Source: Octopus sinensis
Lineage: Eukaryota
DNA: 64,000 bases
Reading direction: 5' to 3'
NCBI RefSeq assembly: GCF_006345805.1
Contig: NC_043006.1
Span: 78,926,001 to 78,990,000 of the forward strand
The notes beneath the pieces were generated by a model. That model was not told where the DNA came from, did no database searches, and saw only the letters and a list, made by a program, of their open reading frames with translations. Of this stretch, positions 8,906 through 42,947 are shown piece by piece. Each line of letters starts with the position of its first letter. Within the stretch, counting starts at the first letter, position 1. The position numbers and the translations under genes are program-made.

Positions 8906-9073
8906 TTCATGCGAGGTCGACTTTGCTTTTCATCCTTCGGGATCGATGAAATAAGTACCAGTTTCGCACAGGGGTCATTGTAATTGACTATTCCCCTTTT
9001 GGATAGGCTTGGTTGGTTTCGTTGTTTGTGGCCCTTTAGAGACTCAGATCCGAAAAGAAAATATTCATATATG

Positions 9074-9114
<41 letters not shown>

Positions 9115-9615: not shown

Positions 9616-9658
<43 letters not shown>

Positions 9659-12600
9659 GTGTGTGTAATTAGGGTTAACCGCAGCTGTTTCCTCTTGAAA
9701 TTGCTATTACAAAATATTTTTTCAGTGTCTGACTAATATTCTTTTTATTTGCTCTTTTTTTTCAGGTCGTGATATCTTCTACTTTGAGAATAAGCAATAC
9801 TACAGACTTAGCCGATGACAAGCAGCAAACGTGTCTCACCAACTTTATAAAGTACGCTAACGACAAGGATATGGCATATAGTATAGCGATTAATATTTCT
9901 AACAGTGCTGCCTGTGGAGATGCAAAACGGGAGGGATCAAATATAACTCTATATACCTATTGCCATGACGGGAAAATTCCGATCGACCTGCGAGGAGGAA
10001 ACACCCACTGCGGTATGTAGTCTACATTTATTTTATTTCTCGTTTTTGTTCGCTAGTGGTGCTCACTTTAAGGGTAGGTAACTCCCATCTTTTATATTGG
10101 TTAGTGTCTTATTTTTGTATAGTTAGAACCATTATGCTTATCATTTTTCTGATGTAAACTTAACAAATTTGGTTGAATACCTGTAAAATACAACTTAGCT
10201 GTTGCTTCATTGACACAAACATAGAGTAGAAATTCCCAGTTCAAGGTCTTTGCATTCCTTGGGTGGAGCGTGAGAATGGCATTTCAAAAAGCGCAACAAA
10301 GACGGAAAATATAGATGTAACCAAAATATGTGTAACAATTCTTTCTTTTTTTTTTTGTGCATGTTATTTCGTATTTGTTTCTATCTAGAAATCAAAGGAA
10401 ATTACGAGTATTCTCTTCAAACTTCGTTTTTGTGATCTGGACATCGATGTTTTGAAACATACCTATTTTTCCTTACATTTCAACCAGATTCAGCGCTGAC
10501 GCAGAAATATCGTTATAGCAAATATTCTGCTCAATACCACAGCCTTGCTTGTCAGTTGCTTGACCTTAAGCACTTGAGCATGACTCCATGCCAATCAGTC
10601 AAACAGCCTTTTTGTCGGATGCGATCCAATCTTTCCGTGGAATCCACAGCAGTAATACTCTCCAAGGTGAAGAAGCAGGATCTCGTTGTCTTTGTTGTTC
10701 CCACTCTTGAAGAGTTTTATGATCAAGGCTGACCAGCGTCGCATTCTTTTTGTCTTTTATCTCAAAGAGGTCACTAAAATATTTACCAGTTGTCTGTATC
10801 TTCTAGACTGAATAGCTGCTAATATGCGGCTGATCGTTTCTAAAATTACATACGGAAAATAACGAGCTTCAATTCTGATACCCTCAGGCATCCAATAATC
10901 AAATACTTCTGAAGAGGATAAAAAGCTAGTTTATTGCAGACATATCTTTATGGAGGCTAAAGTACTTTCTCTCAAAGTTAGTCAACTTTGATATACAAAA
11001 TAGTGTCGTGTCCAACGGAGACAATTTAATACTTCAGTGAACCTTTAACGCATGAGCCGTCAATTAACTGGTTGCCCAAAACCCAGTGATGAAGTCTCTA
11101 CATGTTTACACAACAGGCGAGAAATAGTAGCCATAGTCTCCCTCATATCACAGTGTGCCGTCTGAAAATAAGGAAGGAACATATTGGAATAATTTAGTAA
11201 GTCCTGCTTCACCTTGCCTTGAGCCTTCAATCACTTGGAGTTGTAGGTGTGCCACCATAATATACGATGTCTTTGATATCTCAAACTTAGAAAGCCCATC
11301 TCTTGTCTTATGTGGCTACAGTTAATTTCTTGTAGAAAGGAATAGAGAGATGAGGAGAAAAAGAAAAGAAGAAAAGGATCGCCCCATCACCACCACAACT
11401 GGCCAGCTGCTTTATTTGTTGACTCTGAAAAGATGAAAGAAAAAACTGACCTTGGTGAGGCTGCAGAGAGCCGGAATATTCACCACATAATGATCTTTCC
11501 GATACTTTAACGACTCTGCCAGTTGACCGCTAGTACGTCCAGCACACTCATCCTGAAAAAATAAAAGATGGTTATATGGTCAAAGCTGAAATGTTTTTCG
11601 CCATAAGTCTACGTAATAAGAATTGTATTGTTGCTAAAAAAATAACAATAAATGTTATTCAAATATCATTTGAGTTTACATCTAGAATGCCTAGAATGAA
11701 ATACGAAGCATGAATTGACATCATCGGTTATACTGAATATTTCCAGAAGTATTACACTTCGGAAGATTAATAACCAAACAAGGGATTTAAATGTTAATAC
11801 GATCTCATAGTTGTAGAATTTAGCTTAGTTTTAAACATTATATTTATTTTAATGGCTTTTATCTATTTTATATTGCAATTTGTGAAAAACTACATCTTTG
11901 GCTTCAGTTTCGTTGGCCAGTCGCTGCTTCCTTGCATTTGTGATGGCAAAATTCGTCAAAGAAGAATCTGTTTTTCAATGCCAACCAATATTTGTGAAAG
12001 ATCTTGTACGCAAAGCCCCGTTATTTCCGACGGGTTTTTTTCCTCGAGGTTTAAATATTTCCAGAAAAAAATAGGGGCTTCCAATGCAAGAATCATTTTA
12101 AAATTAAATATTTTCGCTTTATTTGCAGTTTTCATGGATTTATTTCCTTCAATATTGATTTTTAAAAATGTTAATATGAAATTAATATTAAGCTGCAAGT
12201 GTTGTGTAATAAATTATGTTGCAGACAAAACTACATTTTTCTTATTTTTTGTTAGGGAACATGGGGCAATGAGTTGGTAAAGGAGGCGGTAGTATAAGTA
12301 TTGCAGAAAAAAAGGCTAAAATGTAAAAGACAAATGTACGCTGCTCCCTTCACTTATAGCGATTGCTTTTACTTCTACCTACTCTCTATATACCATTGAT
12401 CATCTACCATGGTACCGTAAATAAAAATGCCAAGGAGTTGTCTCCCGTGCTTGCTTGACCAATCATAATGATATTTATTAATAAGTGTTATTTGGTTGAT
12501 TTGTTTTTAATGTGCACACTCTTAACATCGCAAGACTCTTTTAATTATGGTTAATAAACCCTTTAGTTAATAATCCAACAATTTAAAGTTTGTGACTTTT

Positions 12601-15600
12601 GACACAAACTCGCGTGTATGCGCCTGCAAAAGTGTAGATTTTTTTTCTTATATAACATTTCACAGTTCTCTCTCACTTTCTCACTCACTGTCTCTTTCCT
12701 TCTCTCTTTCTCTCTCTACTCGTTTCTCATTCAACATTTCTCTCTTTCTTCAGTTAAATGTCCTCTTGGTTCTTATGGTACTAAAATTAATGGTGTCACT
12801 GAATGTAAACCCTGTCCAATTGGAGAGTATAAGGATACTGATGGGAACCAAACCTGCACCCCTTGCCCGGCAAATACATCGACACACTCAGAAGGAAGTA
12901 CAAATGTTAACGATTGTAAAGGTAAGTCTTTTTATACCTCTTCTTCCCAGCTAATCTACAAACAATTTTGTTTTGTCCCCCTTTTGTTTTGATTTTGTTG
13001 GGTTTTTTTTGTTTTTTCTTTTATAAATATGTGCTTAAGGAATTATCGTTTCTGACTGTTGCTTAACCCTTCAACGGCGGATATCATCGATTGATGTTTC
13101 ATCAGAGAACAGCAGACATGGTCGATTGATGTTTCAAAACTTTTGCATGGCTACAAGCACCATTAAAAGAAAGTGAATATTTTACGACACTTTTCAATAA
13201 TGAGACTGGAAATTGTATTGCACGAAAGATTAATAATTTTTGTATTCCAAAGTTAATATTTTTGTATATCGTCTTGCCTCACTTGCTTGTCCATACATAT
13301 ACTCCTCTACCTGCTGAAGTTCAAATCTCTTGAGCACTACGAAGTGTATTCTATACAGAGAGTACCTGTCTCTAATCTAGAATCTATATACGAGTTTAAA
13401 TATGCTTGGGGTATACCGGAGCCCATAAAAAAACCATTCACTGTATTTTGTAATAAAGAAAATTTTTCGCTGTTGACAAATGGTGTACATGCACCTAAAT
13501 CAGCACGCAGCGCCACCTCCCCAAATTGTGAGATACAAGCATTTTGGAGTGGTTAACTCCCCTGCGAGCTGATAAGAGAGATTGTCCCTTATGATATTCT
13601 CATCATTGTTGGATGACTGGTAGCGCTAATCGGTGGATCACCGTAAATAAATTACAGGGTGGTATCGCTAAGTAGTGATGTGTATAAATACAAATTTATT
13701 ACCTTTTCAAATATGCTTGGGCCATATTTGAACCTATAAGAAAGCCATTCCCTGTTTTGTAATGGAGAAAAGTTCTCGCTGTAGACAAATGGTGTAAATA
13801 CACCTATTTATTTAAAGTAAAAATAAGTACAAAGATTCTCAAGATGAAAAATATTTTAGGATTCTTGTTCGTTTTGTTTTGGTGCTGGGGGCGTTTGGCA
13901 CACGCACTCATGCGATCCTTTTCCGCCGTTTAAAGGTTAATAATATTATAAACAGATTTAAGGCAGCTCGCAGAATTGTTACCGCGCCGGGAAAAAAACA
14001 CTTAGCGGCGTTACTCTGACTTTCCGTTCTGAGTTCAAATGCCGCAGGGGTAGATTTTGCATTTCATTTCTTCGGGATTGATAACGCACCAGTTGTAATT
14101 GACTTATCCCGTAGTTGCTCGCCTTGTGCCAAAATTTGAAATCAATATTGTAAATAAATTCAGGACGACAGAAAGCGGATTGGCAACGCTGTATAAAATA
14201 TCTTGAAGTCCTGGAGCAGCTGTCTATGGCTTGAGTTCGAATCCCGCTGAGTTCAGCTTTTCCTTTCATCCTTTCGGAGTCGATTAATAAAATAGCAGTG
14301 CAGGGTGGGTTGGACTGATGAACTTACTAAAGCGTCAGAACTGTTTCCTTGTATTATCTGATGGGGTTCTTTGAGTTCAGATTTGTAATTCCACCAACGT
14401 ACCGATGATAGAAAGCAGCATCCCATCCAACAATCAAATGGCCAGAGTGAACAGGTAGGTAGGACTGCAACTAACATTAACAATCCAGCAATTAAATGCT
14501 GTCATCTTGGTCCAACAAGAGATTGACAACGGTTGAAAGGAATTTAATGTAAAGGTGATGAATTAGCAACATAGATAAAGCAGAACGTCGAACAAAACAG
14601 TCTGCGATATTTACCTAAATCCTTTTACGTTCTGAATTCTTATTCTGCCATGGATGACTTGTCCTTTTATCATTCCAGGCTTGATAATATACTAATCACG
14701 TACTGGAAATTAGTATAAATGCTCCTATACGCCTCCCAAGTGATTTGTGGACGTGTTAAAGGATGTGTGAGATTTCTGATATCGGGTTAAATGACAGTAA
14801 ATTGGCAGATGTAGGTGGAGTAGAGGTCGACGTTCTGCTCCTGACACTTCTCCTGCAGCTGTCTAGCAGCAAACACCATATCGATAGTCCCACGCTCTTT
14901 CCGGAAGCGACACTTGCTCCCAGGTAGTAGAACTTGCTCTAAGTGTGCAATGAGGCGGTTGAGCAACACTGTAGCCAGGATCTTGCCTGTGATGGACAGC
15001 AGTGAAATTCTGCGATGATTGTCGCAGACCTGGTGGTTTCCATTTTGCATGTAGAGGTGGATGATGGGGGTGGATGAAGACCGCAGACAAGCCAGGAAGA
15101 ACAGAACTAACAACCCTGTAGCAGGCGCTACCATTCCCTGTCTACACTGTCAAAGATTCTTTCGGGCGCAGATTGGCCTCACTAGCCATCTGCGGACTTA
15201 CAAAACAAGCCCACCCCACCCCAGGATGACTAGATGGTCTTCGTCGCATCGACGAACAAACTACAAATTGGCAGAGTTGTTAGAGCGTCGGGTGAACGGC
15301 CTTTGCAGTATTTGTCCTTAATCTCTGAGTTCAAATCCCATCAAGATCATTTTTGCCTTTCATTCTTTCGTACTCGGGTCAAAAGAATATCAATCAATCA
15401 AGGAAAGTGGCGAGACCATAAGAAAGCTGGACCAGTTTGCCGGCCGGTGGCATCAGCTGTAGTCTTACTGCCACGTGGTGTATCTTTATTTTGCAGTGCT
15501 TCTCCTCTGTTCGTCAATTGCGATGGCTGGAACGAAGGAACAGCATGCTTCAGTGAAATTCTGGTTTCTTGGGTTTTTTTTTTTTTTGCTGGGGAAACGG

Positions 15601-18973: not shown

Positions 18974-21795
18974 CATTATTATTAATACTACTACTTCTTT
19001 ACAGCGCAGTGTAGTAAAGGTCATTATTCCTTCGATGGCTTTGAACCTTGTATAAAGTGTCCTCTAGGTTACTATACCGATGTCACAATGCAAACAACGT
19101 GTTTGGAATGTCCTGATGGAACTACTACTATGATTACTGGGGCAACAAATGCAACTAACTGTGTTTCTGTTGGTAAGTAACTCCAATGACAAAGAAAAAT
19201 GTATTTTCTTTAATCTTCTATGCTTTTGTAGTCATTGAACTGCAGAGAATGGTTTTAGTCTGTCGTGAGAACTCCAATGCAATATTTCAGCTTACTACTT
19301 TCATTGAGTAACTTAAATACATTTTCTTTTGTAGTTTGCATTCCTTCTTATTCTCTTTTCCATCAGATTTTAACGTTTGCTTGATACATTTACATGGATC
19401 ATTTACAGCTGGTTATTTTTAACTGTAACACGCCTCACGTTGTTAAAACAAAGATTCGGTGGGTTCATTTATCTTCTACTTGTTTCAGTCATTTGACTAC
19501 GGCTATGCTAGAACAACGCCTTGAAATTTTAGTCGAATGTATCAACCCAAGTACTTATTTTTTTTAGCCTGGTATTTCCTCTATCGGCTTCTTTACCAAA
19601 CCGCTGAGTTATGAGCACGTAATCACACCAGCACCGGTTGTCAAGCAATAGTGGGACTCAAACACAAAGACATAACAGTAAAAGGAAATACTTTTGTCAA
19701 AGATGTAACACAAGATCATACAGTCTATCCCTATGTAAATTCAATCAAAAACAATTTTATATACCGTAAGAGGTTAAAACAATTTTAGGACTAAATTTCT
19801 TGAAAGACGCTCTCAACCTGTTTCAATTTATTATTTAAGAGTATCAAGGTGGCAAGCTGGCAGAATCATTAGCACGTCGGACAAATTGCTAGCAGCATTT
19901 CAACCGTTTTTATGTTCTGACTTCAAATTCCACCGATGTCGACTTTGCTTGTCATCCTTTCGGAGTTGATGAAATAAATACCAGTACAGCACTGGGGTCG
20001 AAGTAATCGACTTACCCTCTTCCCTCGAAATGCTAGCCTTGTGCCAAAATTGGAAGCCATTATTTAAGATTATACACTACATTCTGAGTTCAAATTCTGC
20101 CGAGGTCGATTTTGCCTTTCATCCTTTCGAGATCGATAAATTAAGTACCAGTGGAACATTGGGGTCGATGAAATCAACTAGTCACCTCCCCTAAATTTCA
20201 AACCTTGTACCTATAGTACAAGGGATAATTTAAGCTTATGGAGAAATTTGATAAAATAATAAACGTTTCCATTATACAACTTGTGTTTTGGACCTAACTA
20301 AAGTGTTTGGCATGAGATTTTAATTTGAATTGGATGGTTCTGTATTGTAGAACCAGGAACAAAATTGACTAGATAATTTTTGCAAGTTTTTCATTTTTTC
20401 CTTTATTTTCAGAAGCAAACATATGCAAAACCAATCCTTGTGCTAATAATGGAACATGCGTGCCAAGTGGACACTCATACAGCTGTAATTGTACTAATGG
20501 TTAGTTAAAACAACTATATTTGTTATCTATGGATATGAAAGTGCTTAACTGAAAACAGGTTCTATTAGCCCGGATTTTATCTAATTTAGGGTAGATTTTA
20601 TCCACCTTAAATTTTGGATTCTTATTCGCATACCCGACAACACTGGTTGCCAAACGTGAATTATGAAATAATTTTTTCAGCTTATCGTACTTCGATACTG
20701 GAAACATTTACAACATCCCGCACCAATAAACCACTATTGTTCCTGAAAGTTTTTTTTTCATTTATATTTTCTACGGATAACTTAAAGCTCACTGCCCGGA
20801 TCTAATCTACTCCATTACTAAACTTTTGCATTTTTAGTAAATGTATCTCAATTCAACAGGCTAATATTATGTGAATAGATAATTTGTAAGAGTTTTTTGT
20901 GTTGGAAAAACCAATTCTAACCGTGTGTGAGTTGATAAGAGAGTAATATCTAGCATTCTTTGGAAAATTCCTAATAATAGCTTCACGAAATTGCAAAGGA
21001 AGATTAGATTCCATTTGCTTCCCATAAGGAATAATTGACCAAATGATTTTATTATTAGTCACCTTATTTTTAGTGTAACTATCTTTGAAAGACATAGATT
21101 TACCTTTAGGACGAAAATAGGGAATAAAATATGGGTTATTTCTCTTCCTCTGTTTGATGTTGGTGTATAAATTAAAATTGATATCGCATACATCCTTACA
21201 ACAAGATTTCATTTCTCCATTAGTAAAGGTAGAATAAGATTGAATGGAATTAATGTAGGTAACTTTCTCTGTATAACCTACTTTAAGTAAGGCAGAGTTA
21301 TAAAATTCGACCTTATCATTGAAAATCTCAACACTAGCAGATAACTTAGACAATCTAAATGAAATATTCTTAACTAAGTTCCTAGTAATTGCCCTAGAAT
21401 GATTACTGAATTTGCTAATATACTTAAGATTGGTCGATGGTTTGTGGTATGGGAAGTACGAATTATTGTGTAAGTTAAGTGTAATATCTAAAAAGTTGGC
21501 CTTCGTTACATCATCATCAAAAACTGTGCTTAATCCCATTCTACGGAAACATTTAACTTATTCTTAACTTTTCGTACTTTTTGGTCGGAAACATTTTGAA
21601 AGTAAACAATTATCAAGATATAGACCTCCATTTATGTTTGGGAACAGTTCTGCCATTTCAAAAAGTATACATATACAGACTAAATCAGCTGCTTGTACTG
21701 AATCAGAGCTTCCCATTGTAACATCAAAACCATACACACTTATAGGTATGCATGCATATATATGTGCGTATTTTTATACATATATACATATGTAT

Positions 21796-22980: not shown

Positions 22981-23285
22981 GAGGCGCAATAGCCCAGTGG
23001 TTCGGGCAGTGGAATCGCGGTCTGATGATCGCGGTTTCGATTCCCAGACCATGCGTTGTGAGTGTTTATTGAGCGAAAACACCTGAAGCTCCACGAGGCT
23101 CCGGCAGGAGGTGGTGGCGATCCCTGCTGTACTCTTTCGCCACAACTTTCTCTCACTCTTTCTTCTGTTGGCCTGCTCGCTTAGCCCGTGGGGTGGCGTC
23201 ATTTTAAGGCTAAAACAATGCGAAGCGCATTGTGACCACCGATGTGTAGCAACATCTGATAGCCTGGTCGGTCACTGTGATCACG

Positions 23286-25040: not shown

Positions 25041-28000
25041 TGGGGGAGGGAGGGTGATAAAAGGAAGAGGAAGAGTGTAAGTCATGAATTACATATATAA
25101 TGTGTTATTTTCTTACTTTTCATTCCAGTTGTGATACGTCTATTTTGCCGTGTAGTGCAAACCCTTGCCAAAATGCTTCTAGTTGCGAGAATCTTGGTAA
25201 TGAACGCGCTAAATGCAACTGTCTACCCGGATTTGAAGGGGAGAAATGTCAAGACAATATTGGTAAATATATTGTTTTATTTTGTATTATTTTTGTTGGC
25301 CTTTTGCTTTTTGTGAGTTTTTTAATTGGGAGTGGGGTACTTGTGGGACAAATAAATTACACTGGTGAACAAAATTCGAGCTTTTTGCTCTCCCATAAGC
25401 TAAAGAAAGCAAACTTTATAGTACTTTTAATGCAGATTTCGAATCTGTTTTTAGAATTTTTCTATCAGGCATGATTTTTATTTGACAGAGTAATTAAATT
25501 AGACAATAAATGTACTATATTAATGCAAAAATATGACTGACTATTATAATTGGTCAACAGAATTAATGAAAAATTCTGTCCCACTAGCAAAAGTAGGTGA
25601 ACTTAATAGCATTTTATCTACAGTATTCATGTGTGTCTTCTGATTTTTCTTCCATAAGTCATAGTCTTCTTGTGATAGCATATGTAAATTGTTAATTATA
25701 TTTCATCAATTCAAAAACTGGGCTAATATTACAAGGAAATTTGTCTTTAAAACGTTGAACCGTATGATTTTTGACTGTATTAGCTTCTGGGACATCTATT
25801 TTTAATGACCATCTATAATCAGCCAACAGAGAAGAGCTCCATTTTCCTTGGTACCAGGTTTCCATATTCAGAATGTCCCGGTGAAACCTCTCGCCGTCTT
25901 CATCTCTGACAGCCCCAAGATTTGCAGGGAAGTGGATTTTTAAGTTCATTTGCATTCCAAGGCCTTGTATGATGTCAGTAGCTTTTTTCACTATGTCAGA
26001 ATAGTTCTCTGCTCAGTGATTCACCAAAAACTCTCAGCAAACTTTCTTAACTGACAGTCACGCAGCTTTTTCAACATCATTGAGCTTTTCATCAAACCTT
26101 TGGTCTCTCATCAGCTCCCTAATCTGTGGTCCAACAAAAATACCTTCCTTGATTTTGTATCATATACTCTTGAAATTTTCAGCAGTGACCATCCCATCTT
26201 TTTTCCTGTGTACAAAGAGTTGAGGACAATATTATCCAATGTATACTTCTCTAAGACAGTTGTGTATTATTTGAGAGAGATACTGCTACTATATGTAGCT
26301 GATCAAACGACCGTGTAAAGCTAGCATGTCTCGCAGATCGCGTGATGTTATGATCTGTGAAAATCGTTGAGGTCATCGTCATGGAAGATTGTCCAGTTTG
26401 AGATCATTTTCGATGGCTAATGTAATTTCTGATTTGAAATTCTGGTACCATTCATGTCATTGCTCGCGATTCGAGCAGTCCTCAGCATAGGTTTATTGCA
26501 ACATTAGAAAAGTCTTTGTAAAAGTTTTAAAGGATGCTTTCGTTTGGCTTTTTCGAAATTTAAGACAGAATTCTACACAAACACACAAACTAGAAAAAGA
26601 ATTAAAAAATGACGATACTTTGTGCTACATCATGTATCCTTAAAACATATTTTAAAATCTCATTGTATAAAAATAGACTAATATTTTATCAATCCGCAAA
26701 GTCCCTATGTTCTGGTGCCAATCGCCTAACGAACTACACTTACCCTCGCTTTACCACTTTTATAACAATTACTACCTGAAGTGGTGTGTGAGGTGTATTA
26801 AACTGAGGTCGAGGTCAACCATTCACTGCAATCGCACGCTCGCTGCTCCGACCAAATGACGTATCGTTTTAAAACTTCATTTTCTTTTTGGACAGTTCTC
26901 ATGTATGTGTGTATGAGTCTATGTGTAAGTGTGTTCGGATGTATGGGCCTATGTGTAAGTGTGTGCGGGTGTGTGAGTGCTTGTATGAGCGTGTGAGTGG
27001 GTATATAAACTTGCGGCATAGTAACATCATATTTCAGATCAAATATGTAAACAGACTTAGTAACTAATTGTTTAATATATGTATATATACATATATATAT
27101 ATATAAACAAGTCAAATCTATGTATGTATGTATATATATGTATGTATATGAATGTTATGTATGTATATATATGTATGTATGTATATGAATGTTATGTATG
27201 TATATATATGTATGTATGTATATATATATGTATGTATATGAGTGTTATGTATGTATATATGTATATGTATGTATATATATATGTATGTACATATATATGT
27301 ATGTATGTATGTATATGTAGGTATATATATATATATTATATATATATATATATATAATATATATATATATATGTTAGTGTTCCTACCAGTGATTAAGTCA
27401 CAGGGCAAGGCAGGGAATTGAACCAACTGGTTTCAGCTTCTGCTAAGCGTCATTGGTTGCCCTACTTTTCCCTAGTTGCCGTGAAAGCGTAGTGGGCAGT
27501 GCTACCTCATAAAACAAACATCCTTGGAAGCTATATAGTTAACATGCGGTGCTTTTTTCCCCAACGTGGCTATAAAAATGCTTGTTAAATATAAGAGTCT
27601 AAAGCTCTTATCATGTATTAAAACGTTTAATATTGAATACTTTGTTTAGGTGTCCTGTTCAAATTTGAAAATGAATGATTAAGTCTCTATATTACTTTAT
27701 TTTTTCCTTTTACTTATTGCCACTTACGTTTGTTACCCTTTCAGACGATTGTGCAAGCTCCCCATGTCTTTTTAACGGAAGTTGCACTGATTTAGTTGAT
27801 GGTTTTGAGTGTAAGTGCCATAGCGGGTTGTCTGGAAAAATATGCAACGTCAGAGAGAACCCATGCAATGTATCAAAGTGTCATGGAAACGTTTGTATTG
27901 TTAACGAAGAAGCAATGGACAGCATATGCAGTTGTAACGAAGATTATACATACGGTAAGGCTACAAGTTTGGTACATATTTTCATCATAAATTTATTCTA

Positions 28001-29422
28001 ACAACACTTACTAATAAACGCATAGAAGATTTGTCTGCATCTGTGTGGATGTCTATATATATATATATATCCACCACAAATGTGGGAGATTCTGTCTGTG
28101 GCTGCGTTTGTGGGTTTGTTAGGTAATTTTATATCGTTTTATCGATTTTTATGAAACTTGACACGTGAGTAGAACTCATGCCTAGAAAGCGTATGGCATA
28201 CTCAGATTTCTAAAAAAAAAACGATGATAGGGACCCTGGAAGGAATCGTTATATATATCTAAAATATTTCATTTTAACATCCAAGGGAAATAACCCATTC
28301 GGCCAGATTTTAATAGCCAAGGGAAATAACCCATCCATTTTCCTAAATCATCTCTCTCTATATAAACGACAGTTTGTCTGTGCGTGTTTCTGTGTGTCTG
28401 TTTTCTTGTACCCTCACCCTGACCACGGCTTTCAACCGATTCTGATGAAACTTGACACACACATAGCCCAATGTCATAATTCAAAACTAACGCAGCGAAA
28501 ATTTTGAAAAGTTCCCCCAGTTCTGAAAAAAATCGATAAATTCGACATGGGGTCGAGAATCAGAAACACAAACTGCAAACTGTCTAGGGGACGCAACTCC
28601 ACCTTTTTTAACTAAAAAAAAATTTACCATCATTTTTTTCCATCTTTTTGCTATTTTTTGGCTATAACTCTCTAAAAATGCTTTATAGTTATTTCCCTTA
28701 CAAACCTGAGCAATGCCGGGCGATACTGCTAGTTTGGTATAAATCAAATTGAGTATGCTTATTTCTTAGTATTTGAACTGCTAGAGTTATTTTCGCATTT
28801 TATCAACTCTTAAAAAATTAAATAGTATTTTCTTAAACAATAGATCCACTTATTTCGGTTAGTGACTTATCCACGAATATACCAACTCAGTAATATACAA
28901 TATTACACTCAGCTGAGTGTAATATTCTCTGGCAACGCACAAAATCCCTTTTCAGAGTTATTTACTTTGAATTGTCATTACCTCATATCTGATTAGCCTG
29001 TTATTACGTAACATGCTTTACGATTTTAGTACACATACCTTATTAGTATTTCCTCCTATGTTCTATATACTCTGGAAACGCATTAACGTCTTTTCGGGAC
29101 TACTTTGTTTGAATTCTTACTATCGGGTAACTAATTTGGGTATTCATAACTTATAGGGAATTCCTTTCTAGCCCCACTGTATACTTGAAGCCTATCTTTC
29201 TGATCATATCCAGAGAACTGCATGCGGTGAATGAAGTTCTGTATATTTTTTTTTTTCGTTTCATAGGGTTCGCATAGTAAGGACACGTTGTTCATTATCC
29301 TAACTAAGTCTGCTATCAGTATGTTTTCACGTTGTGTGACAAAGCTGGGATGGATCTTGTGAACAACATATTTTGAAGTAATTACATGAAACCCATAAAC
29401 CCATAACCCATGTGTGTGCGTA

Positions 29423-29510
<88 letters not shown>

Positions 29511-32500
29511 GTCCTCGTGCTTGTGTGCTTATTGCTGATAGAACAGTTGGTCAACATGCATATTTCGTTGCTATTTCCAGACAAAATTCGGCCGGCAGAA
29601 TCTGAAATACTTGAAACCGACGGATACACTTACATTTTGATATATGCATGTTTATATACAATGCGGTTTTTAATGATCCTCTCTCCTTTTCAATATTTTA
29701 GCCGAGGTCTGTCAGCTCTCCTATGAATCTAGTACAAAGTATGAGAGTTCAAATCCTTATAAAACAGAAGCTGCTGCATCCTCGAAGGTTTGCACTACCG
29801 CATGTCTCAACGACAATCAATGTCAGTCCGTGACATTTGACAACAACACAAACAGCTGCTACTTTTTCAATGGTAAAGTCAACACCAGTAAAGATGCTTG
29901 CTGTGAAACATTCACGAAACATTGCCAAAATCCAACAGGTAAAAACATATACACTAATCTCAAAATTTATGAAAATGCTTCAAGCATAAATTTAACGTTT
30001 ACTTATAAAAGTCGGGAACGTTCGCCTGATAACAAATTTGACTCTGCTTCCAAGATCAAAAATAACATTGTTATAGCTTATGAAAATTGTTTACTATCTT
30101 AGAATCTACTCCTTTCAAACGTTCAAGATATTTTGATTGTTTCAGAGAATTATTGGAGTCCGTGGTATACTGTAAACGGATCTAGAATACCAGAAGAAGC
30201 AGTAAAGACTTTGCGTGATGTAAGTTTCAAGTTTCAACCAAAGTAAAAAAAATATAAATTTCTTTCATTATTTCATTTTTACAAGAAAGAATTGTAATCT
30301 AGGAGATTAAAAAACAAAACTAATTTAGCGTACATACTTATTTCTTCTGAGTGATGTTTTTGTTTTATTCCGTAGCATTATTTGGGATGAAATTGTTTGT
30401 TAAATTTGTGTAAGAATTTCAGTAACGAATGAATGTTTAGTACAAAACACGATATGCATTTTAGCTGGCGCGAATGCCACTGTGTAATTAAGAAGGTCGC
30501 TTCCCAACCACATGGTTTCAGATTCAGTCTCGCCGCATAGCACTTTGGACATGTATCTCCTGTAAACTCGGACCGATAAAACACTGTGAGTGGATTTGGT
30601 GAACGAAAACTGAAATAAGGCCGGCGTATAAATACACACACACATACACACATGTGTGTTTGTGTGTGTGTATTCGTATTTGCAAATATCTCCTTGTTTT
30701 GAGACACATGATAATATGATAGTTGTAAGCGAGTGTCACTAGATACAAGCGGTGTCCATTCTTTCCAATCGTCGGTGAAAAACGCTACTGGTCATGCAGA
30801 AATATTACCTAACTTGCGAATGTGTGAAGGTTAACGACAGGAAGAGTATCCGATCATAGAAAATCTGGCTCAGCAAATTCGGTTCGACCCATGTGAGTAT
30901 GAAAAATCTGGATGTTAAAATGACAACAATAACGATGGCAATGAAGATAACTTTAGTTGTGACCCCCGCAACAATTCACTCAAATATATGTGTACGTTTG
31001 TGTGTGTGAGTAATTTTATCTAGACTTTGGGAATAGGTGCCAGATGTTTTAGGAAATGTAATCTGAAAGGAATTACATCATATTCACAATATTCATTTGT
31101 TGCTTACATTCTTCATACTGTACAACAATTAATCGATTTATTATATACGTAAGTATACGAGGGGGTGACTTTAGATAAAGAAAATACAGGGGATCAATCA
31201 ATTATGATTTTATTCAACGTATATGTTCCTCAGATTTACACACTTATTGTAGCGATCCTTCAGTTTTTCTAAGTCCTGTAAAAGCACTCGGTAACTTGGG
31301 CCTCCAGCCAAGCTTTTTCGTGACACCCTTAAAGCCAGGAAATTTTCAGCACCCTCTTGTAGATATCGATACGCTCAGTATCAATAGCGGTGTAAATGTT
31401 GCTGGGGCGTTCTTTGAAAGAATTCATTAGCTCTGAATATTTGAATTTACGTCTTTTAAGTTAATCTTAATTCTTTGTGATGTGAAAAAAAAATGGAATG
31501 GATATCCGCCTCGATAATTCTCTTAAAACACAGACAATTCTTTCTGCTGTATGCACAGGGACTGAAATTTTGTTGGAAGGGAGATAGTCGATTGCCCCGA
31601 CCTCATCCCCCGTAATTATTTTAACGACCTGCCCTCGGTGGAATTTGAACTCAGAACGTAAAGAGCCAGAGGAAATGTCTCTAAGCATTTTCGCCCGGCA
31701 CTATAACGATTCCGCCAGCTCACCGTCTTCCTTAAATAGGCGATAATGTTAAATAAGTCATAATTAATAATAAAACTACTACTTTTATTTAACTTTTTTT
31801 TTTCATCATAAATGTAGAATACTACACAATTTTATTCTATCTTTAGGTTGGCGTCGATATTTGCAATGGAATGGTTCCTTTGTTGATTCAGTGCCGATCA
31901 CGTGTTGACAGAGCTCCCTTTCTTTGGCAACAGCAATTAGGGATGTCATTTAACCTGAGTGATACTTGCATAATAAATAATGAAAGCTGTAATCCAAGTT
32001 GCCCACCGTATCAGCTACGTTTCCAGTGTAACGTCAACAAAGGTATAACATTTGAATAATTTCTTTGTTAATTTTTTCTATAATGTGGCGTTTGTTTGGG
32101 ATATTTTTCTGAATATAAAGAACCCCCAGGGATTCCTCACAATAAATTTCCTTCAAATCGTTCCTTGCTGTCTTTCAAAAAAACGGAACACATTGGAGAG
32201 TGTAATCTTAAATGTGTATTACACAAAAAATAAAAAAATTAAGTGCTTATGATCGGAATATTTTTAATAATCCGTAGATCTAAGTAACAACAAAAAGACC
32301 AACGACAGCGACAACATGGCCACAATGATGATTATATTCTCTGATGTGGAGGCGCAATGGCCCAGTGGTTAGGGCAGCGGACTCGCGGTCGTAGGATCGC
32401 GGTTTCGATTCCCAGACCGGGCGTTGTGAGTGTTTATTGAGCGAAAACACCTAAAGCTCCACGAGGCTCCGGCAGGGGATGGTGGTGATCCCTGCTGTAC

Positions 32501-33993
32501 TCTTTCACCACAATTTTCTCTCACTCTTACTTCCTGTTTCTGTTGTACCTGTATTTCAAAGGGCCGGCCTTGTCACTCTCTGTGTCACGCTGAATATCCC
32601 CGAGAACTACATTAAGGGTACACGTGTCTGTGGAGTGCTCAGCCACTTACACGTTAATTTCACGAGCAGGCTGTTCCGTTGATCGGATCAACCAGAACCC
32701 TCATCGTCGTAACCGACGGAGTGCTCCTACTATATTCTCTGATACACGAAACCTGATGATCACAACTGTAAAGCCTTTGATAATTAGTTTTCTTGATCTG
32801 GGATAGTCTACATTCAAAAGAACATTAATCACCTTTAATTTTGTCAACAGATTATTCAACTGTTACAACATCCCAGTAGTCCAGGTACTTTGAAATGATA
32901 TATAATGCCCCAGGCGCATGGGGTAGTGAGTTCGATTCCCGGACAGGGCAGTGTGTTGAGCAAGATACTTTATTTCACGTTGCTCCAGTTCACTCAGCTG
33001 TAGAAAAGCGTTGCGACGTTACTGGTGTTAAGCTGTATTAGCCTTTGCCTTTCTCTCTCCTCTTGTTAATGTCACAGATACAAAAAAATAAACATTGGTT
33101 TATAGACTATGGAAAACCAGGAAAAGAAAATATTTGTGTATGTGTGCGCCCAGTGGTTAGGGCAGCGGACTCGCGGTCGTAGGATCGCGGTTTCGATTCC
33201 CAGACCGGGGCGTTGTACACCACGACATACGTCCACAATCTTTTTGTGCCATAGTTATATAATTTTTGCTGAGATATTTTATTTACGTTTGTATGTGTGT
33301 GTAAACATGTGCACGTATCTCTGTATTTGTCACGCCGTATGACAATCAACGTTGGCTTGACTGCGTCCCTGTCGCTTAGCGGTTCGACAAAAAGGAACGA
33401 TTGAATGGATGCCAGGCTTAAAATAACAACAGTGGGAGATTTCATCAACTAAACACCGTTCGGGTTGTTGGCCAAAAATGCTCGCGGTTCAAAGACTGTA
33501 ATGCGCAAATCAGTGAAGGAATTTTTTTTCTTTTTTAAATGTTCTGCTCAATTATTTAATGTATCTATTTTTCAGTAATGGACCAAAAACAATGTTTTAA
33601 CAAGACACCATGCGGTGCAATACAGTGCTACAATGGTGGTACATGCAACTCAAATATGTGCTCATGCACCAATGGTTACAGTGGAGAGTTCTGCCAAAAG
33701 ATGAATGATAACTGCGATCCAAACCCTTGTGAAGGTGGCACTTGCACAAACCTTATTAATGATTATCAGTGTAATTGTTTCTCAGGATACGAAGGTAATT
33801 TCATCATTAGTCCTCAAGGTTACAAAATTATTTTCTATTGAAATTTATGTTATGTCAAGCAATACATTCTCTCTTCATAGAAAATGAAATATGATTTCCT
33901 TTTTTAAAATCTTATTCTGCAGGAGTGGCTGTGTGGTAAGTAGTGGATTTGGTAGACGGAAACTGAAAGAAGCCCGTCGTATATATGTATATA

Positions 33994-36527: not shown

Positions 36528-37983
36528 GTTTGAATTGCATAATAGTGGGTTTTTTCTCTCATTTATATATTATATATTTATATTGTGAAATTTGATTTAA
36601 TACTAAATTGAAATTTTCCCTGTAAGTTTGGAGTTATACTCCCTATTATTATTATTATATATATATATAATTGTTGTCATCCTTCCTTTTTCTATACATA
36701 TCGAAACAAAAGAAAACCAATCATTGTCTTTGAATTTCTCATTTTAGGCAAGAACTGCACAAATATAAATGACTGTGCCAATGCAACATGCAATGTGACA
36801 GGTACACAGCAATGCAAAGATCTCGTAGAAGATTACCAATGTATCTGTAAGCCAGGCTACAAAGGGCAAATGTGCAATGTAAGTATTATTTTCAAATAAT
36901 CTAACAGTACGATCAGGAATACAAGCGATCGAAATGGGATTCTTCTGAAGTAGCATTATTCCATACAATGTTTGGTTGAGAGGTCAGAGTGTCTCTCTAA
37001 GTCGAGCTACGACTTATCTGTATTGAGAGTTCACAACTCTGGTACCACGGACATATTATTAGAATGTCGCAAGAAAGTATCACAGGGTTCATTCTTCAAT
37101 ACAACTGGAGGAAATCCTTAGAGTAGACTAAGAATGAGCTGGTGCTTCATAAACACCGGAAGATATATCGCACTTCTGTGCTAGAGGACAGGTTTCATCG
37201 AACTACGACAATGGTCGTAGAGAGCTCAAACTTTTTATCGGAGCCATAGAAGGAAACTTTAAATCCACCGTAATAAGAGACATTCAATGACCCTTTCACT
37301 TTTAATCTGGAAACTTAAAGACGAGGGGACCAGTCTCGATATCAAATAGTAAATCTTCTCCAAAACCAGACCTTATATTAATGAATAAAAAAAAAATGCT
37401 CAGTACGTTCTCTTGAAAAACAATATCCCTTAAAGAACTTGAGAACGTCAAATGAATACATATATTCCAGGAACGAGATTTTTTCTGTGTATCCGCATTA
37501 CAACAAATACATCTTGTCGGAATTTAAAAGTAGACCACCAGATACTTAGTAAACCATTAACATCTCATCAACGTCTGCTTGACATTCGAATTATTGTAAA
37601 GCTGATTATGTCCCTTGAGTTTGTCTTCTTGTTTTCTTCCTTACCAGCGTCTCTCGTTTAAACCTTATCAGTTCAAACGGCAACTGGCAAACGGTCTTGT
37701 TCTCAACTTGAAAAATGCCGAAATTAAATATTATTTAAACCAGGAAATGCTGGGTAGCTATTTTAACAAGATTTTGGCTTATATATATTATAATAGTGTG
37801 TGTGTGTGTGTGTGTGTGTTAATATATGTTCCTGCGAATGAATACATAAGTATATGCTTCTTCCCAACCACGTTTCCGGGTTCAATCCCACTGCGTAGCA
37901 ACATGAGCAAGTGTCTTCTACTATAGCCTCGGACCGACCAAAGCCTTGTGGAATTGGTAGATGGAAAATGGAAGAAGCTCGTC

Positions 37984-40774: not shown

Positions 40775-41049
40775 AACATTGCTGAATGATTCTGAAGTCG
40801 GCTTTGCAATCACGTTTTTTTTACTTTTTTTATTTTATATGTGTGTGAAATATAAAACTGAGTGTTTATATTATTCTGCGTTTTAATATCAATCCTTTTA
40901 AAACTTCAGCTGCCAGTCAAACACTCATGGTAAGCAATGTAACCTCTCCAACTCGGTTTGCTCCAATGCTAATCCATGCATTAACAACGCCACCTGCATT
41001 GATAAACTGGGTGATGTCCATTGTAATTGCACTGAAGGTAAATATACAC

Positions 41050-41231: not shown

Positions 41232-42947
41232 GATCGCCTTTACCTTCCCAGAGCCCAAGGAGGTCGAGGCCTGATCCAATTTGAACTAGCTTACAAAACA
41301 ACCACAATTGGACTGGCCAAATATCTCGAAATATCGAATGACTGGATGCTAAAGCTCGTGGAAAATCACGAGAGACGAAAGAAGCTTCATTCTATCATCA
41401 AGGAAAGCAAAAAATTTGCTATTGATCTCGTGCAGGATACCCAAACTGAACAACCCGAGGGAAGTACGGCAACTATTGTTGCAAAGAAGGTGAAAATGAT
41501 GGCAATGAAAAAAGCGCACGAGCAATTGGCTGATAGGTGGGAGGAGAAACCTCTGCACGGCAAATATGTGACCCGCAGCACAAAGCTGATGTTGACCAGA
41601 AGCAAACCCATCAGTGGCTGCGGAGCTCAGGGCTAAAAGCAGAGAGCGAAGGTTTCATCCTGGCTGCTCAAGACCAAAGCCTATCAACCCGGAACTACCA
41701 GCCAATGTGATGAAAAATGGAGCAGACCCAAAATGCCGATTCTGCAACGACATGATTGAAACAGTGGACCACCTAATCTCTGGATGTAAAGTCTTAGCAC
41801 CAGTGGAGTATAAATTAAGACATGACAGATTTGGCCAATATCTCCACTGGCTAATAAGTCGGCATTACAATATCAAAACTGCCGACAAGTGGTATAATCA
41901 CCACCCTGAGGCTGTAACTGAAGGAGAAAATGTAACCATTCTGTGGGACTTTCCAGTACATACAGACCGAACCATCAAGGCCTAAACCAGATATTGTTTG
42001 TGAAAGACCAAAACAAAAGTTTGCTTATTGATCGACATGAGCATCCCCTGTGATCATAATATCTCAGCGAAAGAGTTTGACAAGCTCAGAAAATATAAAG
42101 ACCTACTCTTGAAATTGAGAAAATGTGGCATCTCAAGGCGGTTACAATACCAGTGATCGTAGGAGCACTAGGAATGATCAAGAAGGACCGAAATTATATG
42201 AGAATGATCCCTGGCTTACCATCCCTGCAAGAAGTGCAAAAGATTGTCTTAACTGGTACATCACACGTATTGAGAAGAGCATTGTCGATGTGAGAACTGT
42301 TGCTGCTCATGTATTTTAATTTAACTTAAAAAAAAAAAAAAATGAACGAACTACTGAGTTTGGTTTAATGGCCTACCAATATATACTATGAGTTTCTTTG
42401 CCCTAGGAGTCGGGAAGACACTCGGCAAGAAATGGAAGAAAATTTGAAAGAAGAAAAAAAAAGTAATAATAATAATAATAATAATAATAACTCAATGCCA
42501 GCAGAAGATGACAACGTTTCTCTAAAAAAGATGGAGAAACTTTCAAAATACAAAGACCTGGAAATAGAGGTAACTCGAATGTGGAATCTAAAAACAGAAA
42601 CAATTCCTATCATAGTAGACGCACAAAAAAGAAAGAAAGAAGAAAGCAAAGGACCACTGATGAGGTCACAGAAGTGTGACGAAAGAACTCTGGCCGAAAT
42701 ACGATTAATATAAAATAAAGCTGAAGCAAGTGAACACCAAATATATATAGTGCGTGTGTTTTTATTGGCTAAACTGGCAACATGACCGTTCCCAAATACA
42801 ACATATATAATATATATATATATAATTATATATAATATATATATATATAATATATATTATATCTATATAGATATATATATATATAATATATAATATTATA
42901 TATATATATATATATATCTATATATATATATTACATTCATATATATA

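What the first reader, a model, noticed from the sequence alone, without database searches (positions are those of the whole stretch)
27745..33794. PAN + WxxW cassette (exons 12-14) appears inserted inside the C5-C6 loop of an EGF domain
Seen: exon 11 ends with only five EGF6 cysteines (...CSCNEDYTY). Exon 15 opens with an otherwise orphan Cys (VMDQKQC) before EGF7. Joining exon 11 to exon 15 keeps frame (both phase 1) and gives C5-NEDYTYVMDQKQ-C6, a 12-residue loop matching the LDLR/cEGF pattern C-x-x-G-Y-x-L-x-x-D-x-x-x-C. The intervening 507 nt (169 aa) encode a PAN domain (8 Cys) and a WxxW domain (6 Cys), both with even Cys counts. Inference: two domains were shuffled into a phase-1 intron within an EGF. 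Either the protein folds as an EGF with a 169-aa two-domain insert, or the cassette is an alternatively spliced binding module. I do not recall this arrangement in SVEP1 or Uninflatable.
Basis: partly seen in the sequence, partly recalled or inferred. Interest (0 to 1): 0.8.

Follow-up and report, generated by a model that had tools for sequence, protein, structure and literature searches.

The report
PAN+WxxW modules nested in an EGF
In a giant cephalopod-only membrane protein, two binding-type domains (PAN and WxxW) are encoded inside an intron that splits one EGF domain of a 13-EGF rod, an old and apparently constitutive arrangement that resembles the globular domains nested in laminin's EGF-like arrays.

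Summary
Exons 11-15 have AG/GT borders. Exon 11 ends after the fifth Cys of EGF6, and exon 15 opens with an orphan Cys. The 507-nt cassette encodes a PAN domain (8 Cys) and a WxxW-like domain (6 Cys).

The window is Octopus sinensis LOC115216258, an uncharacterised ~3,500-aa type-I membrane mosaic protein. It is not a true SVEP1.

Removing the cassette restores a perfect array of 13 EGFs with six Cys each. The orphan Cys then sits 5 residues before EGF7 C1, which matches the usual C6-to-C1 linker. The first Cys of the cassette (AEVC) aligns with the canonical C1 of six-Cys PAN domains.

Seven of the 13 EGFs carry an intron in the C5-C6 loop, so module insertion there is plausible.

The arrangement and all its cysteines are conserved in three Octopus species, Argonauta, a cuttlefish and another decapodiform, so it predates the coleoid split.

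Eleven of 11 full-length cuttlefish transcripts include the cassette, and no skip junction was seen.

Whether EGF6 C5 really bonds the orphan Cys is untested. AlphaFold2 was uninformative, and closure on AEVC (a 9-residue loop) remains a live rival.

It is a new variant of the nested domains known from laminin. Interest is moderate.

The parts
27745..27954 (+). Exon 11. Encodes EGF5 (six Cys) and the first five Cys of EGF6, ending ...CSCNEDYTY plus 1 nt (phase 1).
   Evidence: Exact match to O. sinensis XP_036362858.1.
27933..27935 (+). TGT codon of EGF6 C5, the cysteine whose partner is in question.
   Evidence: Invariant in 5 orthologues (C63).
27955..29701 (+). Phase-1 intron inside the C5-C6 loop of EGF6, upstream of the cassette.
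   Evidence: GT..AG borders.
29702..29938 (+). Exon 12. A complete PAN/apple module in one symmetric phase 1-1 exon with 8 Cys: AEVC, then 26 residues, C-x3-C-x5-C-x11-C, 13 residues, CC, 6 residues, C.
   Evidence: Pfam PAN_1 E = 4.9e-7, above the cut-off. Orthologues give 2.5e-8 and 3.1e-6. AlphaFold2 is confident only for this core.
29710..29712 (+). TGT codon of the AEVC cysteine. It is either PAN C1 or the rival candidate for EGF6 C6.
   Evidence: Aligns with the first Cys of the six-Cys PAN repeats of P0003, 26 residues before C2. It lies 9 residues after EGF6 C5 in all species.
30146..30219 (+). Exon 13. N-terminal part of the WxxW-like domain. The WSPW motif is at 30154-30165.
   Evidence: The motif is W-[ST]-P-W in all orthologues.
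31847..32042 (+). Exon 14. C-terminal part of the WxxW-like domain, with six Cys, ending ...[11 protein letters not shown] plus 1 nt (phase 1).
   Evidence: The homologous exon has the same borders in a decapodiform genome (L001:10067-10273).
32043..33575 (+). Phase-1 intron downstream of the cassette. It contains tRNA-derived SINE-like copies.
33576..33794 (+). Exon 15. Encodes (V)MDQKQC (the orphan Cys), the 5-residue linker FNKTP, a complete EGF7, and the first five Cys of EGF8.
33593..33595 (+). TGT codon of the orphan cysteine (QKQC), the inferred C6 of EGF6.
   Evidence: Invariant in all orthologues and always 5 residues before EGF7 C1.
36748..36878 (+). Exon 16, a comparator. It starts (G)KNC and supplies C6 of EGF8 across another phase-1 intron in a C5-C6 loop.

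Best explanation
SHOWN.
- The region is part of Octopus sinensis LOC115216258. This is a ~3,500-aa single-pass membrane mosaic protein found only in cephalopods so far.
- Its domain order is a lectin-like N-terminus, LDLa, CUB, sushi, calcium-binding EGF, HYR, ephrin-receptor-like repeats, 13 tandem EGFs, a laminin-G-like domain, more ephrin-receptor-like repeats, and a transmembrane segment.
- Exon 12 encodes a complete PAN/apple module. Exons 13-14 encode a WxxW (mucin CysD-like) module.
- Both modules are phase 1-1 units that sit between the fifth Cys of EGF6 (end of exon 11) and a lone Cys at the head of exon 15.
- The layout and every cysteine are conserved from octopuses to cuttlefish.
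- Cuttlefish mRNAs include the cassette.

INFERRED (evolution). The two modules were shuffled into a pre-existing phase-1 intron that split the C5-C6 loop of EGF6. This happened before octopodiform and decapodiform cephalopods diverged. The head of exon 15 is the original end of EGF6, that is, its C6 plus the normal linker to EGF7.

INFERRED (fold and function). EGF6 still closes its third disulfide, C5 to the orphan Cys, across the 169-residue insert. The PAN domain ties its own ends together with its outer disulfide. The 13-EGF rod then runs on uninterrupted, and the PAN-WxxW pair projects sideways from the tip of the small C-terminal hairpin of EGF6 as a constitutive ligand-, glycan- or self-binding module. 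This would be analogous to the L4 and LF domains nested in laminin LE arrays.
For: 1. Deleting the cassette gives 78 Cys, exactly 13 x 6, with regular spacing. The orphan Cys to EGF7 C1 distance is 5 residues, against 5-6 for all 11 other C6-to-C1 linkers.
2. Seven of the 13 EGFs of this array have an intron in the C5-C6 loop. Six of these are phase 1 (EGF1, 2, 6, 8, 12, 13) and one is phase 2 (EGF3). An intronic insertion would therefore often land there.
3. Exon 12 is a self-contained PAN. It scores above the Pfam cut-off. AEVC aligns with C1 of the six-Cys PAN repeats (P0003), with an identical 26-residue C1-C2 spacing. The last Cys lies 21 residues after C5, against 20-24 in P0003.
4. The Cys counts are even: 8 in PAN and 6 in WxxW. 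That leaves EGF6 C5 and the orphan Cys as the only unpaired pair.
5. The joined loop C-NEDYTYVMDQKQ-C has the 12-residue length seen in the cbEGFs of the O. bimaculoides orthologue (CQC-AKGYTLKADNSS-C), and Y, T and D are shared between the two loops. Only the joined version gives weak long-loop EGF hits that end at the orphan Cys (FXa_inhibition E = 0.043, Pvs28 EGF E = 0.087). The AEVC-closed version gives none.
6. Conservation. O. sinensis, O. vulgaris, O. bimaculoides, Argonauta hians, a Sepia-like cuttlefish and a second decapodiform (genomic locus L001, same intron positions and phases) keep all 15 cassette and orphan cysteines.
7. Inclusion in mRNA. Eleven of 11 full-length cuttlefish transcript contigs (11.9-12.7 kb, single ORFs of 3,692-3,693 aa) contain the cassette. 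Two partial ones start inside PAN. There is no skip junction anywhere.
8. Precedent. Laminin L4 domains are inserted between Cys 3 and Cys 4 of an LE domain, and the LF domain is inserted without disturbing the LE array (PMC5338690).
Against: - The distance from EGF6 C5 to AEVC is 9 residues in every species. That is closer to the 8 residues of the 12 sister EGFs than the 12 residues needed for the orphan Cys.
- Exon 12 starts with a split codon, two residues and then Cys. This is exactly how exon 16 delivers C6 of EGF8.
- If PAN uses C1 and its last Cys as the canonical outer pair, the adjacent CC must form a rare vicinal disulfide or pair elsewhere.
- In Argonauta the stretch before the orphan Cys is 19 residues long and poly-Q-rich instead of the 10-residue NVNKVMDQKQ. 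The putative second strand of the split hairpin is therefore not conserved, although this may be a gene-model artefact.
- AlphaFold2 gave pLDDT below 50 for both junctions and for the WxxW part in two runs, and it returns no coordinates.
- A profile of the 12 sister EGFs aligns only as far as C5 plus 4 residues and does not discriminate.
- It is unknown whether the N- and C-termini of a WxxW domain lie close enough together for a loop insertion.
- No orthologue lacking the cassette was found to show the ancestral state.
Confidence: 0.6

Rival explanations
1. EGF6 is an ordinary contiguous EGF that closes on the first Cys of exon 12 (C5-NEDYTYAEV-C6, a 9-residue loop). The PAN domain then lacks its own N-terminal Cys. 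It uses its four core Cys, and its three C-terminal Cys (CC and the last C) pair with each other and with the orphan Cys of exon 15. A long-range disulfide would then clasp the WxxW domain back onto PAN, and the domains would be arranged in line rather than nested.
For: - The 9-residue spacing is invariant in five orthologues and is nearest to the 8 residues of all sister EGFs.
- Exon 12 starts with the same geometry as exon 16, which delivers C6 of EGF8.
- Many PAN domains work with only the four core Cys. Most PAN hits and searches are of this type.
- The total Cys parity also works out.
- The odd CC motif is easier to explain if one of its Cys pairs outside PAN.
Against: - AEVC sits exactly where six-Cys PAN domains have C1, with 26 residues to C2 and a following Q as in P0003.
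- This model does not explain why the orphan Cys lies at the canonical C6-to-C1 linker distance from EGF7 in every species, nor why removing the cassette restores a perfect 13 x 6 Cys array.
- The AEVC-closed EGF6 gets no EGF-family hit, even at E <= 10, while the joined one gets weak ones.
Confidence: 0.25
2. The cassette is a regulated, alternatively spliced module. Skipping exons 12-14 would give a plain 13-EGF rod in which EGF6 closes normally. Inclusion would add a binding module in some tissues or stages.
For: - The cassette is 507 nt with phase 1 on both sides, so skipping is in frame.
- The skipped product would be a fully regular EGF array.
Against: - In-frame skipping is true of most exons in this array and so is not diagnostic.
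- Eleven of 11 full-length cuttlefish transcript assemblies, from separate contigs, include the cassette. Two partial ones start inside it. No sequence has the skip junction.
- The 90% clusters of the O. sinensis/O. vulgaris and O. bimaculoides proteins hold no shorter isoform.
- The splice sites of the cassette exons look strong.
Confidence: 0.1
3. The cassette exons are a gene-prediction artefact, or a decaying insertion that is not part of the mature protein.
For: - Whole-protein Pfam scans do not list PAN or WxxW for these proteins. The precomputed Pfam lists also omit them.
- Other parts of the octopus gene models are visibly wrong.
Against: - Uninterrupted ORFs in cuttlefish mRNA contigs contain the cassette.
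- All cysteines and the W-x-P-W motif are conserved at 38-55% overall identity between lineages.
- Intron positions and phases are conserved in a decapodiform genome.
Confidence: 0.02

Closest known systems
Laminin L4 and LF domains nested in arrays of laminin-type EGF-like (LE) domains
   Same: A globular domain is embedded in a tandem array of EGF-type modules. [quoted passage not shown] In beta chains, the LE modules flanking LF still pack as if contiguous (PMC5338690). The cephalopod case likewise keeps the spacing of the flanking EGFs.
   Different: - The host here is a canonical six-Cys EGF, not an eight-Cys LE.
- The insertion point is the C5-C6 loop.
- The guest is two unrelated small disulfide-rich modules (PAN and WxxW) rather than one CBM35-like beta-sandwich.
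- The nesting here is inferred from sequence, not seen in a structure.
SVEP1 / Polydom-type mosaic adhesion proteins (the name given to the O. vulgaris and O. bimaculoides entries)
   Same: It is a very large extracellular mosaic with sushi, HYR, ephrin-receptor-like, EGF, calcium-binding EGF and a laminin-G or pentraxin-like domain.
   Different: - No VWA domain was detected.
- It also has LDLa, CUB and a lectin-like N-terminus, and a transmembrane segment at the C-terminus.
- Outside cephalopods the best hits are cubilins and Fat cadherins, matched on shared domains only.
- No PAN-WxxW cassette was seen in any non-cephalopod hit. The representatives search found no other protein combining both.
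PAN/apple domains (plasminogen, HGF, factor XI and prekallikrein apple domains, apicomplexan MIC4)
   Same: It has the core C-x3-C-x5-C...C hairpin motif and scores above the Pfam PAN_1 cut-off. It also has outer cysteines at the canonical distances. By established knowledge, these domains mediate protein or carbohydrate binding.
   Different: It has eight Cys, with an extra CC 6 residues before the last Cys. A weak resemblance to the 8-Cys MANEC variant was seen in only one orthologue (E = 0.058).
Mucin CysD / Mucin2_WxxW domain (MUC2 CysD1)
   Same: - It has a WxxW motif at the N-terminus and a length of about 90 aa.
- It ends in the motif ...Y-Q-x-R-F-Q-C.
- It matches the full length of the Pfam profile.
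- MUC2 CysD1 is a small calcium-binding beta-sandwich that makes non-covalent protein contacts (PMC7599080).
   Different: - It scores below the Pfam cut-off in all three orthologues tested: 20.3, 18.5 and 15.3 bits against 22.4.
- It has no sequence match to any solved structure.
- It has six Cys.
- It lies in an EGF array, not between mucin PTS regions.

Membership tests
Canonical EGF-like domain (for EGF6) | C1-C5 pattern: C-x4-C-x4/5-C-x8-10-C-x-C with an aromatic residue after C5. | tested here: met
   The pattern is [28 protein letters not shown]. The same register is found in four further orthologues.
Canonical EGF-like domain (for EGF6) | A sixth Cys contiguous with C5 (8-13 residues away) that belongs to the EGF. 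| tested here: inconclusive
   The only Cys in range (AEVC, 9 residues away) aligns with PAN C1. The orphan Cys is 12 residues away only after the 169-aa cassette is removed.
Canonical EGF-like domain (for EGF6) | A match to a curated EGF-family profile above its cut-off. | tested here: not met
   The joined version gives FXa_inhibition E = 0.043 (14.4 bits against 33.4) and Pvs28 EGF E = 0.087. The AEVC-closed version gives nothing. The profile of the sister EGFs aligns only through C5.
Canonical EGF-like domain (for EGF6) | A C5-C6 disulfide. | not testable with these tools
   AlphaFold2 gave pLDDT below 50 at both junctions and returns no coordinates.
PAN/apple domain (Pfam PF00024) | A profile match above the curated cut-off. 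| tested here: met
   Scores are 29.9, 34.1 and 27.4 bits against 21.4 for the O. sinensis, O. bimaculoides and decapodiform exons.
PAN/apple domain (Pfam PF00024) | Four core Cys (C2-C5, C3-C4) plus an outer C1...C6 pair at canonical spacing. | tested here: met
   The core is C-x3-C-x5-C-x11-C. C1 lies 26 residues before C2, as in P0003. The last Cys lies 21 residues after C5, against 20-24 in P0003. The connectivity itself was not tested.
Mucin2_WxxW / CysD domain (Pfam PF13330) | A WxxW motif near the N-terminus of a Cys-rich module of about 90 aa. | tested here: met
   The motif is WSPW in Octopus and WTPW in Argonauta, Sepia and L001, followed by six invariant Cys.
Mucin2_WxxW / CysD domain (Pfam PF13330) | A profile match above the curated cut-off. 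| tested here: not met
   Scores are 20.3, 18.5 and 15.3 bits against 22.4. However, the full profile (1-88) is covered in all three.
Mucin2_WxxW / CysD domain (Pfam PF13330) | The CysD beta-sandwich fold, or similarity to the solved MUC2 CysD1. | tested here: inconclusive
   There is no sequence hit in the PDB, by single sequence or by profile. The AlphaFold2 model of this part has pLDDT of about 30-45, so no fold search was attempted.
SVEP1 orthologue | A VWA domain plus sushi, EGF and pentraxin domains in the SVEP1 order. | tested here: not met
   Pfam on the 3,176-aa O. bimaculoides protein lists no VWA and no pentraxin. It lists Laminin_G_3 and Laminin_G_2 instead, and also CUB and LDLa. 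No SVEP1 appears among the homologues.
Alternatively spliced cassette | Both inclusion and skipping junctions present in transcripts. | tested here: not met
   Only inclusion is seen in 11 full-length and 2 partial cuttlefish transcript assemblies and in all gene models.
Laminin-type nested domain (L4 in LE) | A globular domain inserted between Cys 3 and Cys 4 of an eight-Cys LE module. | tested here: not met
   The host is a six-Cys EGF and the insertion lies between C5 and C6. The definition comes from PMC5338690. This is an analogy, not membership.

The most novel reading that the evidence does not exclude
A canonical six-Cys EGF domain folds around a 169-residue, two-domain (PAN plus CysD-like) insert in its C5-C6 hairpin. 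Its third disulfide spans the insert, so the EGF rod stays continuous and the pair of binding modules is displayed sideways. This would be the first described split canonical EGF of this kind. It would be a coleoid-cephalopod innovation created by exon shuffling into an intra-module intron, and it has been kept since before octopuses and cuttlefish diverged.
Probability: 0.55. Interest if true: 0.55.

Novelty: new variant of a known kind. Interest (0 to 1): 0.45.

Why it matters
Exon shuffling is usually pictured as adding modules between existing modules. Here the intron that received the new modules lies inside an EGF domain, so the new modules are nested in it.

If EGF6 really closes across the insert, three things follow.
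- Even a ~40-residue disulfide knot can host a two-domain excursion at its last hairpin.
- It would be a natural example of how to graft binding modules onto a rigid EGF rod without breaking it.
- It would extend to canonical EGFs the principle known from laminin L4 and LF domains.

The finding also flags a large, conserved, cephalopod-restricted membrane protein whose PAN and WxxW modules are invisible to routine whole-protein domain annotation.

The biological function of the protein remains unknown.

Tried and rejected
- Word-indexed homologue searches with the cassette alone and with an exon-14 profile found nothing. Only the exhaustive representatives search and a search with the full-length O. 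bimaculoides protein worked.
- AlphaFold2 was run twice on EGF5-EGF8, with 25 and then 28 alignment rows. Mean pLDDT was 47 and 55. Only the PAN core and some EGFs were confident, and both junctions and the WxxW part were below 50. No fold search was run on such models.
- A MAFFT alignment that mixed the exon-14 fragments with the PAN fragments misaligned them, so it was discarded.
- PDB sequence and profile searches for the cassette and for the WxxW part gave only chance-level hits and no MUC2 CysD.
- An HMM of the 12 sister EGFs does not reach C6 in either variant, so it cannot choose between AEVC and the orphan Cys.
- I suspected a missing micro-exon for EGF11 because the O. bimaculoides model has only five Cys there. 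A pattern search found none. The O. sinensis protein showed a normal 128-nt exon at 40910-41037 that I had overlooked.
- I tried to extend the decapodiform genomic locus L001 upstream to reach its exon-11 orthologue. The first 1.67 kb of L001 holds no EGF-like exon. The cuttlefish mRNA supplied the EGF6 sequence instead.
- A literature search for a described PAN + WxxW + EGF arrangement returned only a proteomics paper that lists the domains separately. The perlecan paper was not relevant to nesting.

Full report

- Exon 11 (27745-27954) enters and leaves in phase 1. It encodes a complete EGF5 and then [30 protein letters not shown], which is five cysteines.
- Exons 12 (29702-29938), 13 (30146-30219) and 14 (31847-32042) add up to 507 nt, or 169 codons.
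- Exon 15 (33576-33794) starts (V)MDQKQC. Five residues later comes a complete six-Cys EGF7, and then the first five Cys of EGF8.
- All borders are AG/GT with good pyrimidine tracts.

On its own, exon 12 matches Pfam PAN_1 above the curated cut-off (E = 4.9e-7). Exons 13+14 match Mucin2_WxxW over the full profile but just under the cut-off (20.3 bits against 22.4). Two orthologues give the same pair of matches.

Whole-protein scans do not list either family, and the precomputed Pfam lists of the orthologues omit them too. The cassette is therefore invisible to routine annotation.

**What the gene is.** The 321-aa stretch from EGF5 to the start of EGF9 is an exact substring of Octopus sinensis XP_036362858.1, "uncharacterized protein LOC115216258". 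The O. vulgaris and O. bimaculoides entries are named SVEP1-like. However, Pfam finds no VWA and no pentraxin. It finds LDLa, CUB, sushi, EGF_CA/cEGF, HYR, eight ephrin-receptor-like stretches, EGFs and a laminin-G-like domain. The C-terminus has a transmembrane segment.

A search with the full-length protein returned orthologues only from cephalopods: O. sinensis, O. bimaculoides, Argonauta hians, and a 3,693-aa protein from transcript contigs. The 90% cluster of that last protein contains an Acanthosepion (Sepia) pharaonis entry. After these, the next hits were cubilins and Fat cadherins, matched on shared domains.

**The EGF array.** Taking the array from the O. sinensis protein and removing the cassette leaves 78 cysteines. 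These parse as 13 regular EGFs.

- Twelve EGFs have a C5-C6 loop of exactly 8 residues.
- Every C6-to-next-C1 linker is 5 or 6 residues.
- The orphan Cys of exon 15 lies 5 residues before EGF7 C1, exactly like a C6. The same 5-residue spacing is found in Argonauta, the cuttlefish and a second decapodiform.
- EGF6 is the only irregular member. Its loop would be 12 residues if closed by the orphan Cys, or 9 if closed by the first Cys of exon 12 (AEVC).

Introns in the C5-C6 loop are the rule in this gene. EGF1, 2, 12 and 13 are split two residues after C5 (phase 1). EGF3 is split just before C6 (phase 2). EGF8 is split three residues before C6 (phase 1). EGF6 is split as described above. A module shuffled into an intron of this array therefore had a good chance of landing inside an EGF.

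**Whose cysteine is AEVC?** The exhaustive search returned eukaryotic six-Cys PAN repeats (P0003, P0009) and many four-Cys PAN proteins, which I judged bacterial by eye. MAFFT puts the first Cys of the P0003 repeats on AEVC. The distance to C2 is 26 residues in both, both are followed by Q, and the last Cys of exon 12 lies 21 residues after C5, against 20-24 in P0003.

Exon 12 thus looks like a complete PAN module. It starts three residues before its C1 and ends four residues after its last Cys, in a symmetric phase 1-1 exon. That is the classic shuffling unit. It has two extra adjacent cysteines (CC) 6 residues before the last one, giving 8 in all. The WxxW part has 6. With both counts even, the only cysteines left over are EGF6 C5 and the orphan Cys.

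The joined loop C-NEDYTYVMDQKQ-C has the same 12-residue length as the loop of the cbEGFs in the O. bimaculoides orthologue (CQC-AKGYTLKADNSS-C), and Y, T and D are shared between the two. Only the joined EGF6 draws weak long-loop EGF hits that end at the orphan Cys.

**Conservation and age.** An ORF-like hit to exon 14 (P0004) led to a 100-kb contig from an ENA assembly (L001). That contig carries homologues of exons 12, 13, 14, 15, 16 and 17 in order, with the same phases at the cassette borders. Its exon-15 head reads VMQNNQC-EKK. An A9 run then shifts the frame by one base before SACYDIHC, which is probably a homopolymer error. Its cassette looks most similar to the cuttlefish one (by eye), so I take it as another decapodiform.

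In an alignment of O. sinensis, O. vulgaris, O. bimaculoides, Argonauta and the cuttlefish, identity to O. sinensis falls to 55% (Argonauta) and 39% (cuttlefish). Every cysteine of EGF5 through EGF8 is nonetheless invariant, including AEVC, CC, the last PAN Cys, the six WxxW Cys and the orphan Cys. The W-x-P-W motif and the small motif Y-x-E-x-C-Q-x-S at the exon 11/12 junction are also invariant. The arrangement therefore predates the split between octopodiforms and decapodiforms.

No orthologue without the cassette was found, and no non-cephalopod protein combining a similar PAN and WxxW was found.

**Is it alternatively spliced?** The cuttlefish cluster holds 11 full-length proteins of 3,692-3,693 aa. 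Each comes from its own Logan contig of 11.9-12.7 kb. One of these was inspected and is a single ORF, 269-11350 of 12,154 nt, so it is an mRNA.

- All 11 contain the cassette.
- Two 1,778-aa partials begin inside PAN.
- No sequence has a skip junction.
- The octopus and Argonauta gene models all include the cassette, and their 90% clusters hold no shorter isoform.

Frame-preserving skipping is not diagnostic, because most exons here are phase 1-1. I could not look at octopus reads, so a minor skipped isoform cannot be excluded. Constitutive inclusion is still the better reading.

**How it most likely works.**

- Shown: the exon structure, the domain identities (PAN firmly, WxxW at sub-threshold level), the conservation, and inclusion in cuttlefish mRNA.
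- Inferred: the PAN and WxxW modules were inserted into a phase-1 intron in the C5-C6 loop of EGF6.
- Inferred further: EGF6 still closes C5 to the orphan Cys. EGF6 and EGF7 then stay in register, and the PAN-WxxW pair sticks out from the last hairpin of EGF6 as a binding module.

PAN/apple domains are protein- or carbohydrate-binding modules (established knowledge). MUC2 CysD1, the solved WxxW domain, is a calcium-binding beta-sandwich that clasps other domains non-covalently (PMC7599080).

The closest precedent is laminin. L4 domains are inserted between Cys 3 and Cys 4 of an LE module. The LF domain sits in the array while the flanking LE modules pack as if contiguous (PMC5338690).

**What argues against it.**

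- The spacing from C5 to AEVC is 9 residues in all species. That is closer to the array's norm of 8 than the 12 needed for the orphan Cys.
- Exon 12 begins with the same geometry as exon 16, which supplies C6 of EGF8.
- If PAN uses its C1 and last Cys as the canonical outer pair, the CC needs an unusual solution.
- In Argonauta the segment before the orphan Cys is longer and poly-Q-rich.
- Two AlphaFold2 runs were uninformative at the junctions.
- A profile of the sister EGFs cannot discriminate.

The rival is therefore an in-line EGF6 closed by AEVC, with the orphan Cys clasping back to a spare PAN Cys. I give it about one chance in four.

**Novelty and verdict.** The protein models are already in the public databases, but the nested arrangement is neither annotated nor, as far as two literature searches show, described. 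It is a new variant of a known kind, namely globular domains nested in EGF-type arrays. It also illustrates exon shuffling into an intra-module intron. Interest is moderate. It would rise if a disulfide map or structure confirmed that a canonical EGF can close across a two-domain insert.

Noticed in passing
window 2815-5167 (N run at 3063-3162): About 150 residues are missing from the window between the HYR exon and the exon at ~5167. These are several exons (DYIPFEVSC...SSACTV) that are present in the O. vulgaris, O. bimaculoides and cuttlefish orthologues. A 100-N assembly gap lies in this stretch. The O. sinensis RefSeq model bridges it by reading into the intron ([15 protein letters not shown]...).
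   Followed up: partly
window 40910-41037: A normal EGF exon, (S)[10 protein letters not shown]...CNCTE(G), supplies C5-C6 of EGF11 and most of EGF12. The O. bimaculoides RefSeq model XP_052826892.1 lacks it and instead reads intron sequence ([10 protein letters not shown]), which gives a false five-Cys EGF.
   Followed up: yes
whole proteins P0020, P0025, P0026, P0027: Pfam scans of the whole protein or of the 311-aa segment do not report PAN_1 or Mucin2_WxxW, and neither do the precomputed Pfam lists. The isolated exons do match. Routine annotation therefore misses the cassette.
   Followed up: partly
L001:11716-11760: In the decapodiform genomic contig, the exon-15 orthologue changes frame inside an A9 run between VMQNNQCEKK and SACYDIHC. 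This is most likely a homopolymer error of the long-read assembly rather than a real frameshift, because the cuttlefish mRNA is intact there.
   Followed up: partly
P0026 (Argonauta hians), residues ~1975-2000: Between the last WxxW Cys and the orphan Cys, Argonauta has [19 protein letters not shown] where the other species have a 10-residue stretch (NVNKVMDQKQ in Octopus). This is either a real poly-Q expansion at the exon 14/15 junction or a gene-model artefact.
   Followed up: no
window 32340-32420, 33150-33215, 22990-23080, 63628-63771 and elsewhere: Introns carry several copies of a tRNA-like SINE (GGCCCAGTGGTTAGGGCAGCGGACTCGCGGTCGTAGGATCGCGGTTTCGATTCCCAGACC...), and many (TA)n, (TG)n and (TATG)n microsatellites.
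   Followed up: no
window 14787-15134 (-), 20853-21539 (-), 41346-42319 (+), 60825-61229 (+): Introns contain longer ORFs that look like retroelement or transposon remnants. An example is an RT-like ...[27 protein letters not shown].... They were not analysed.
   Followed up: no
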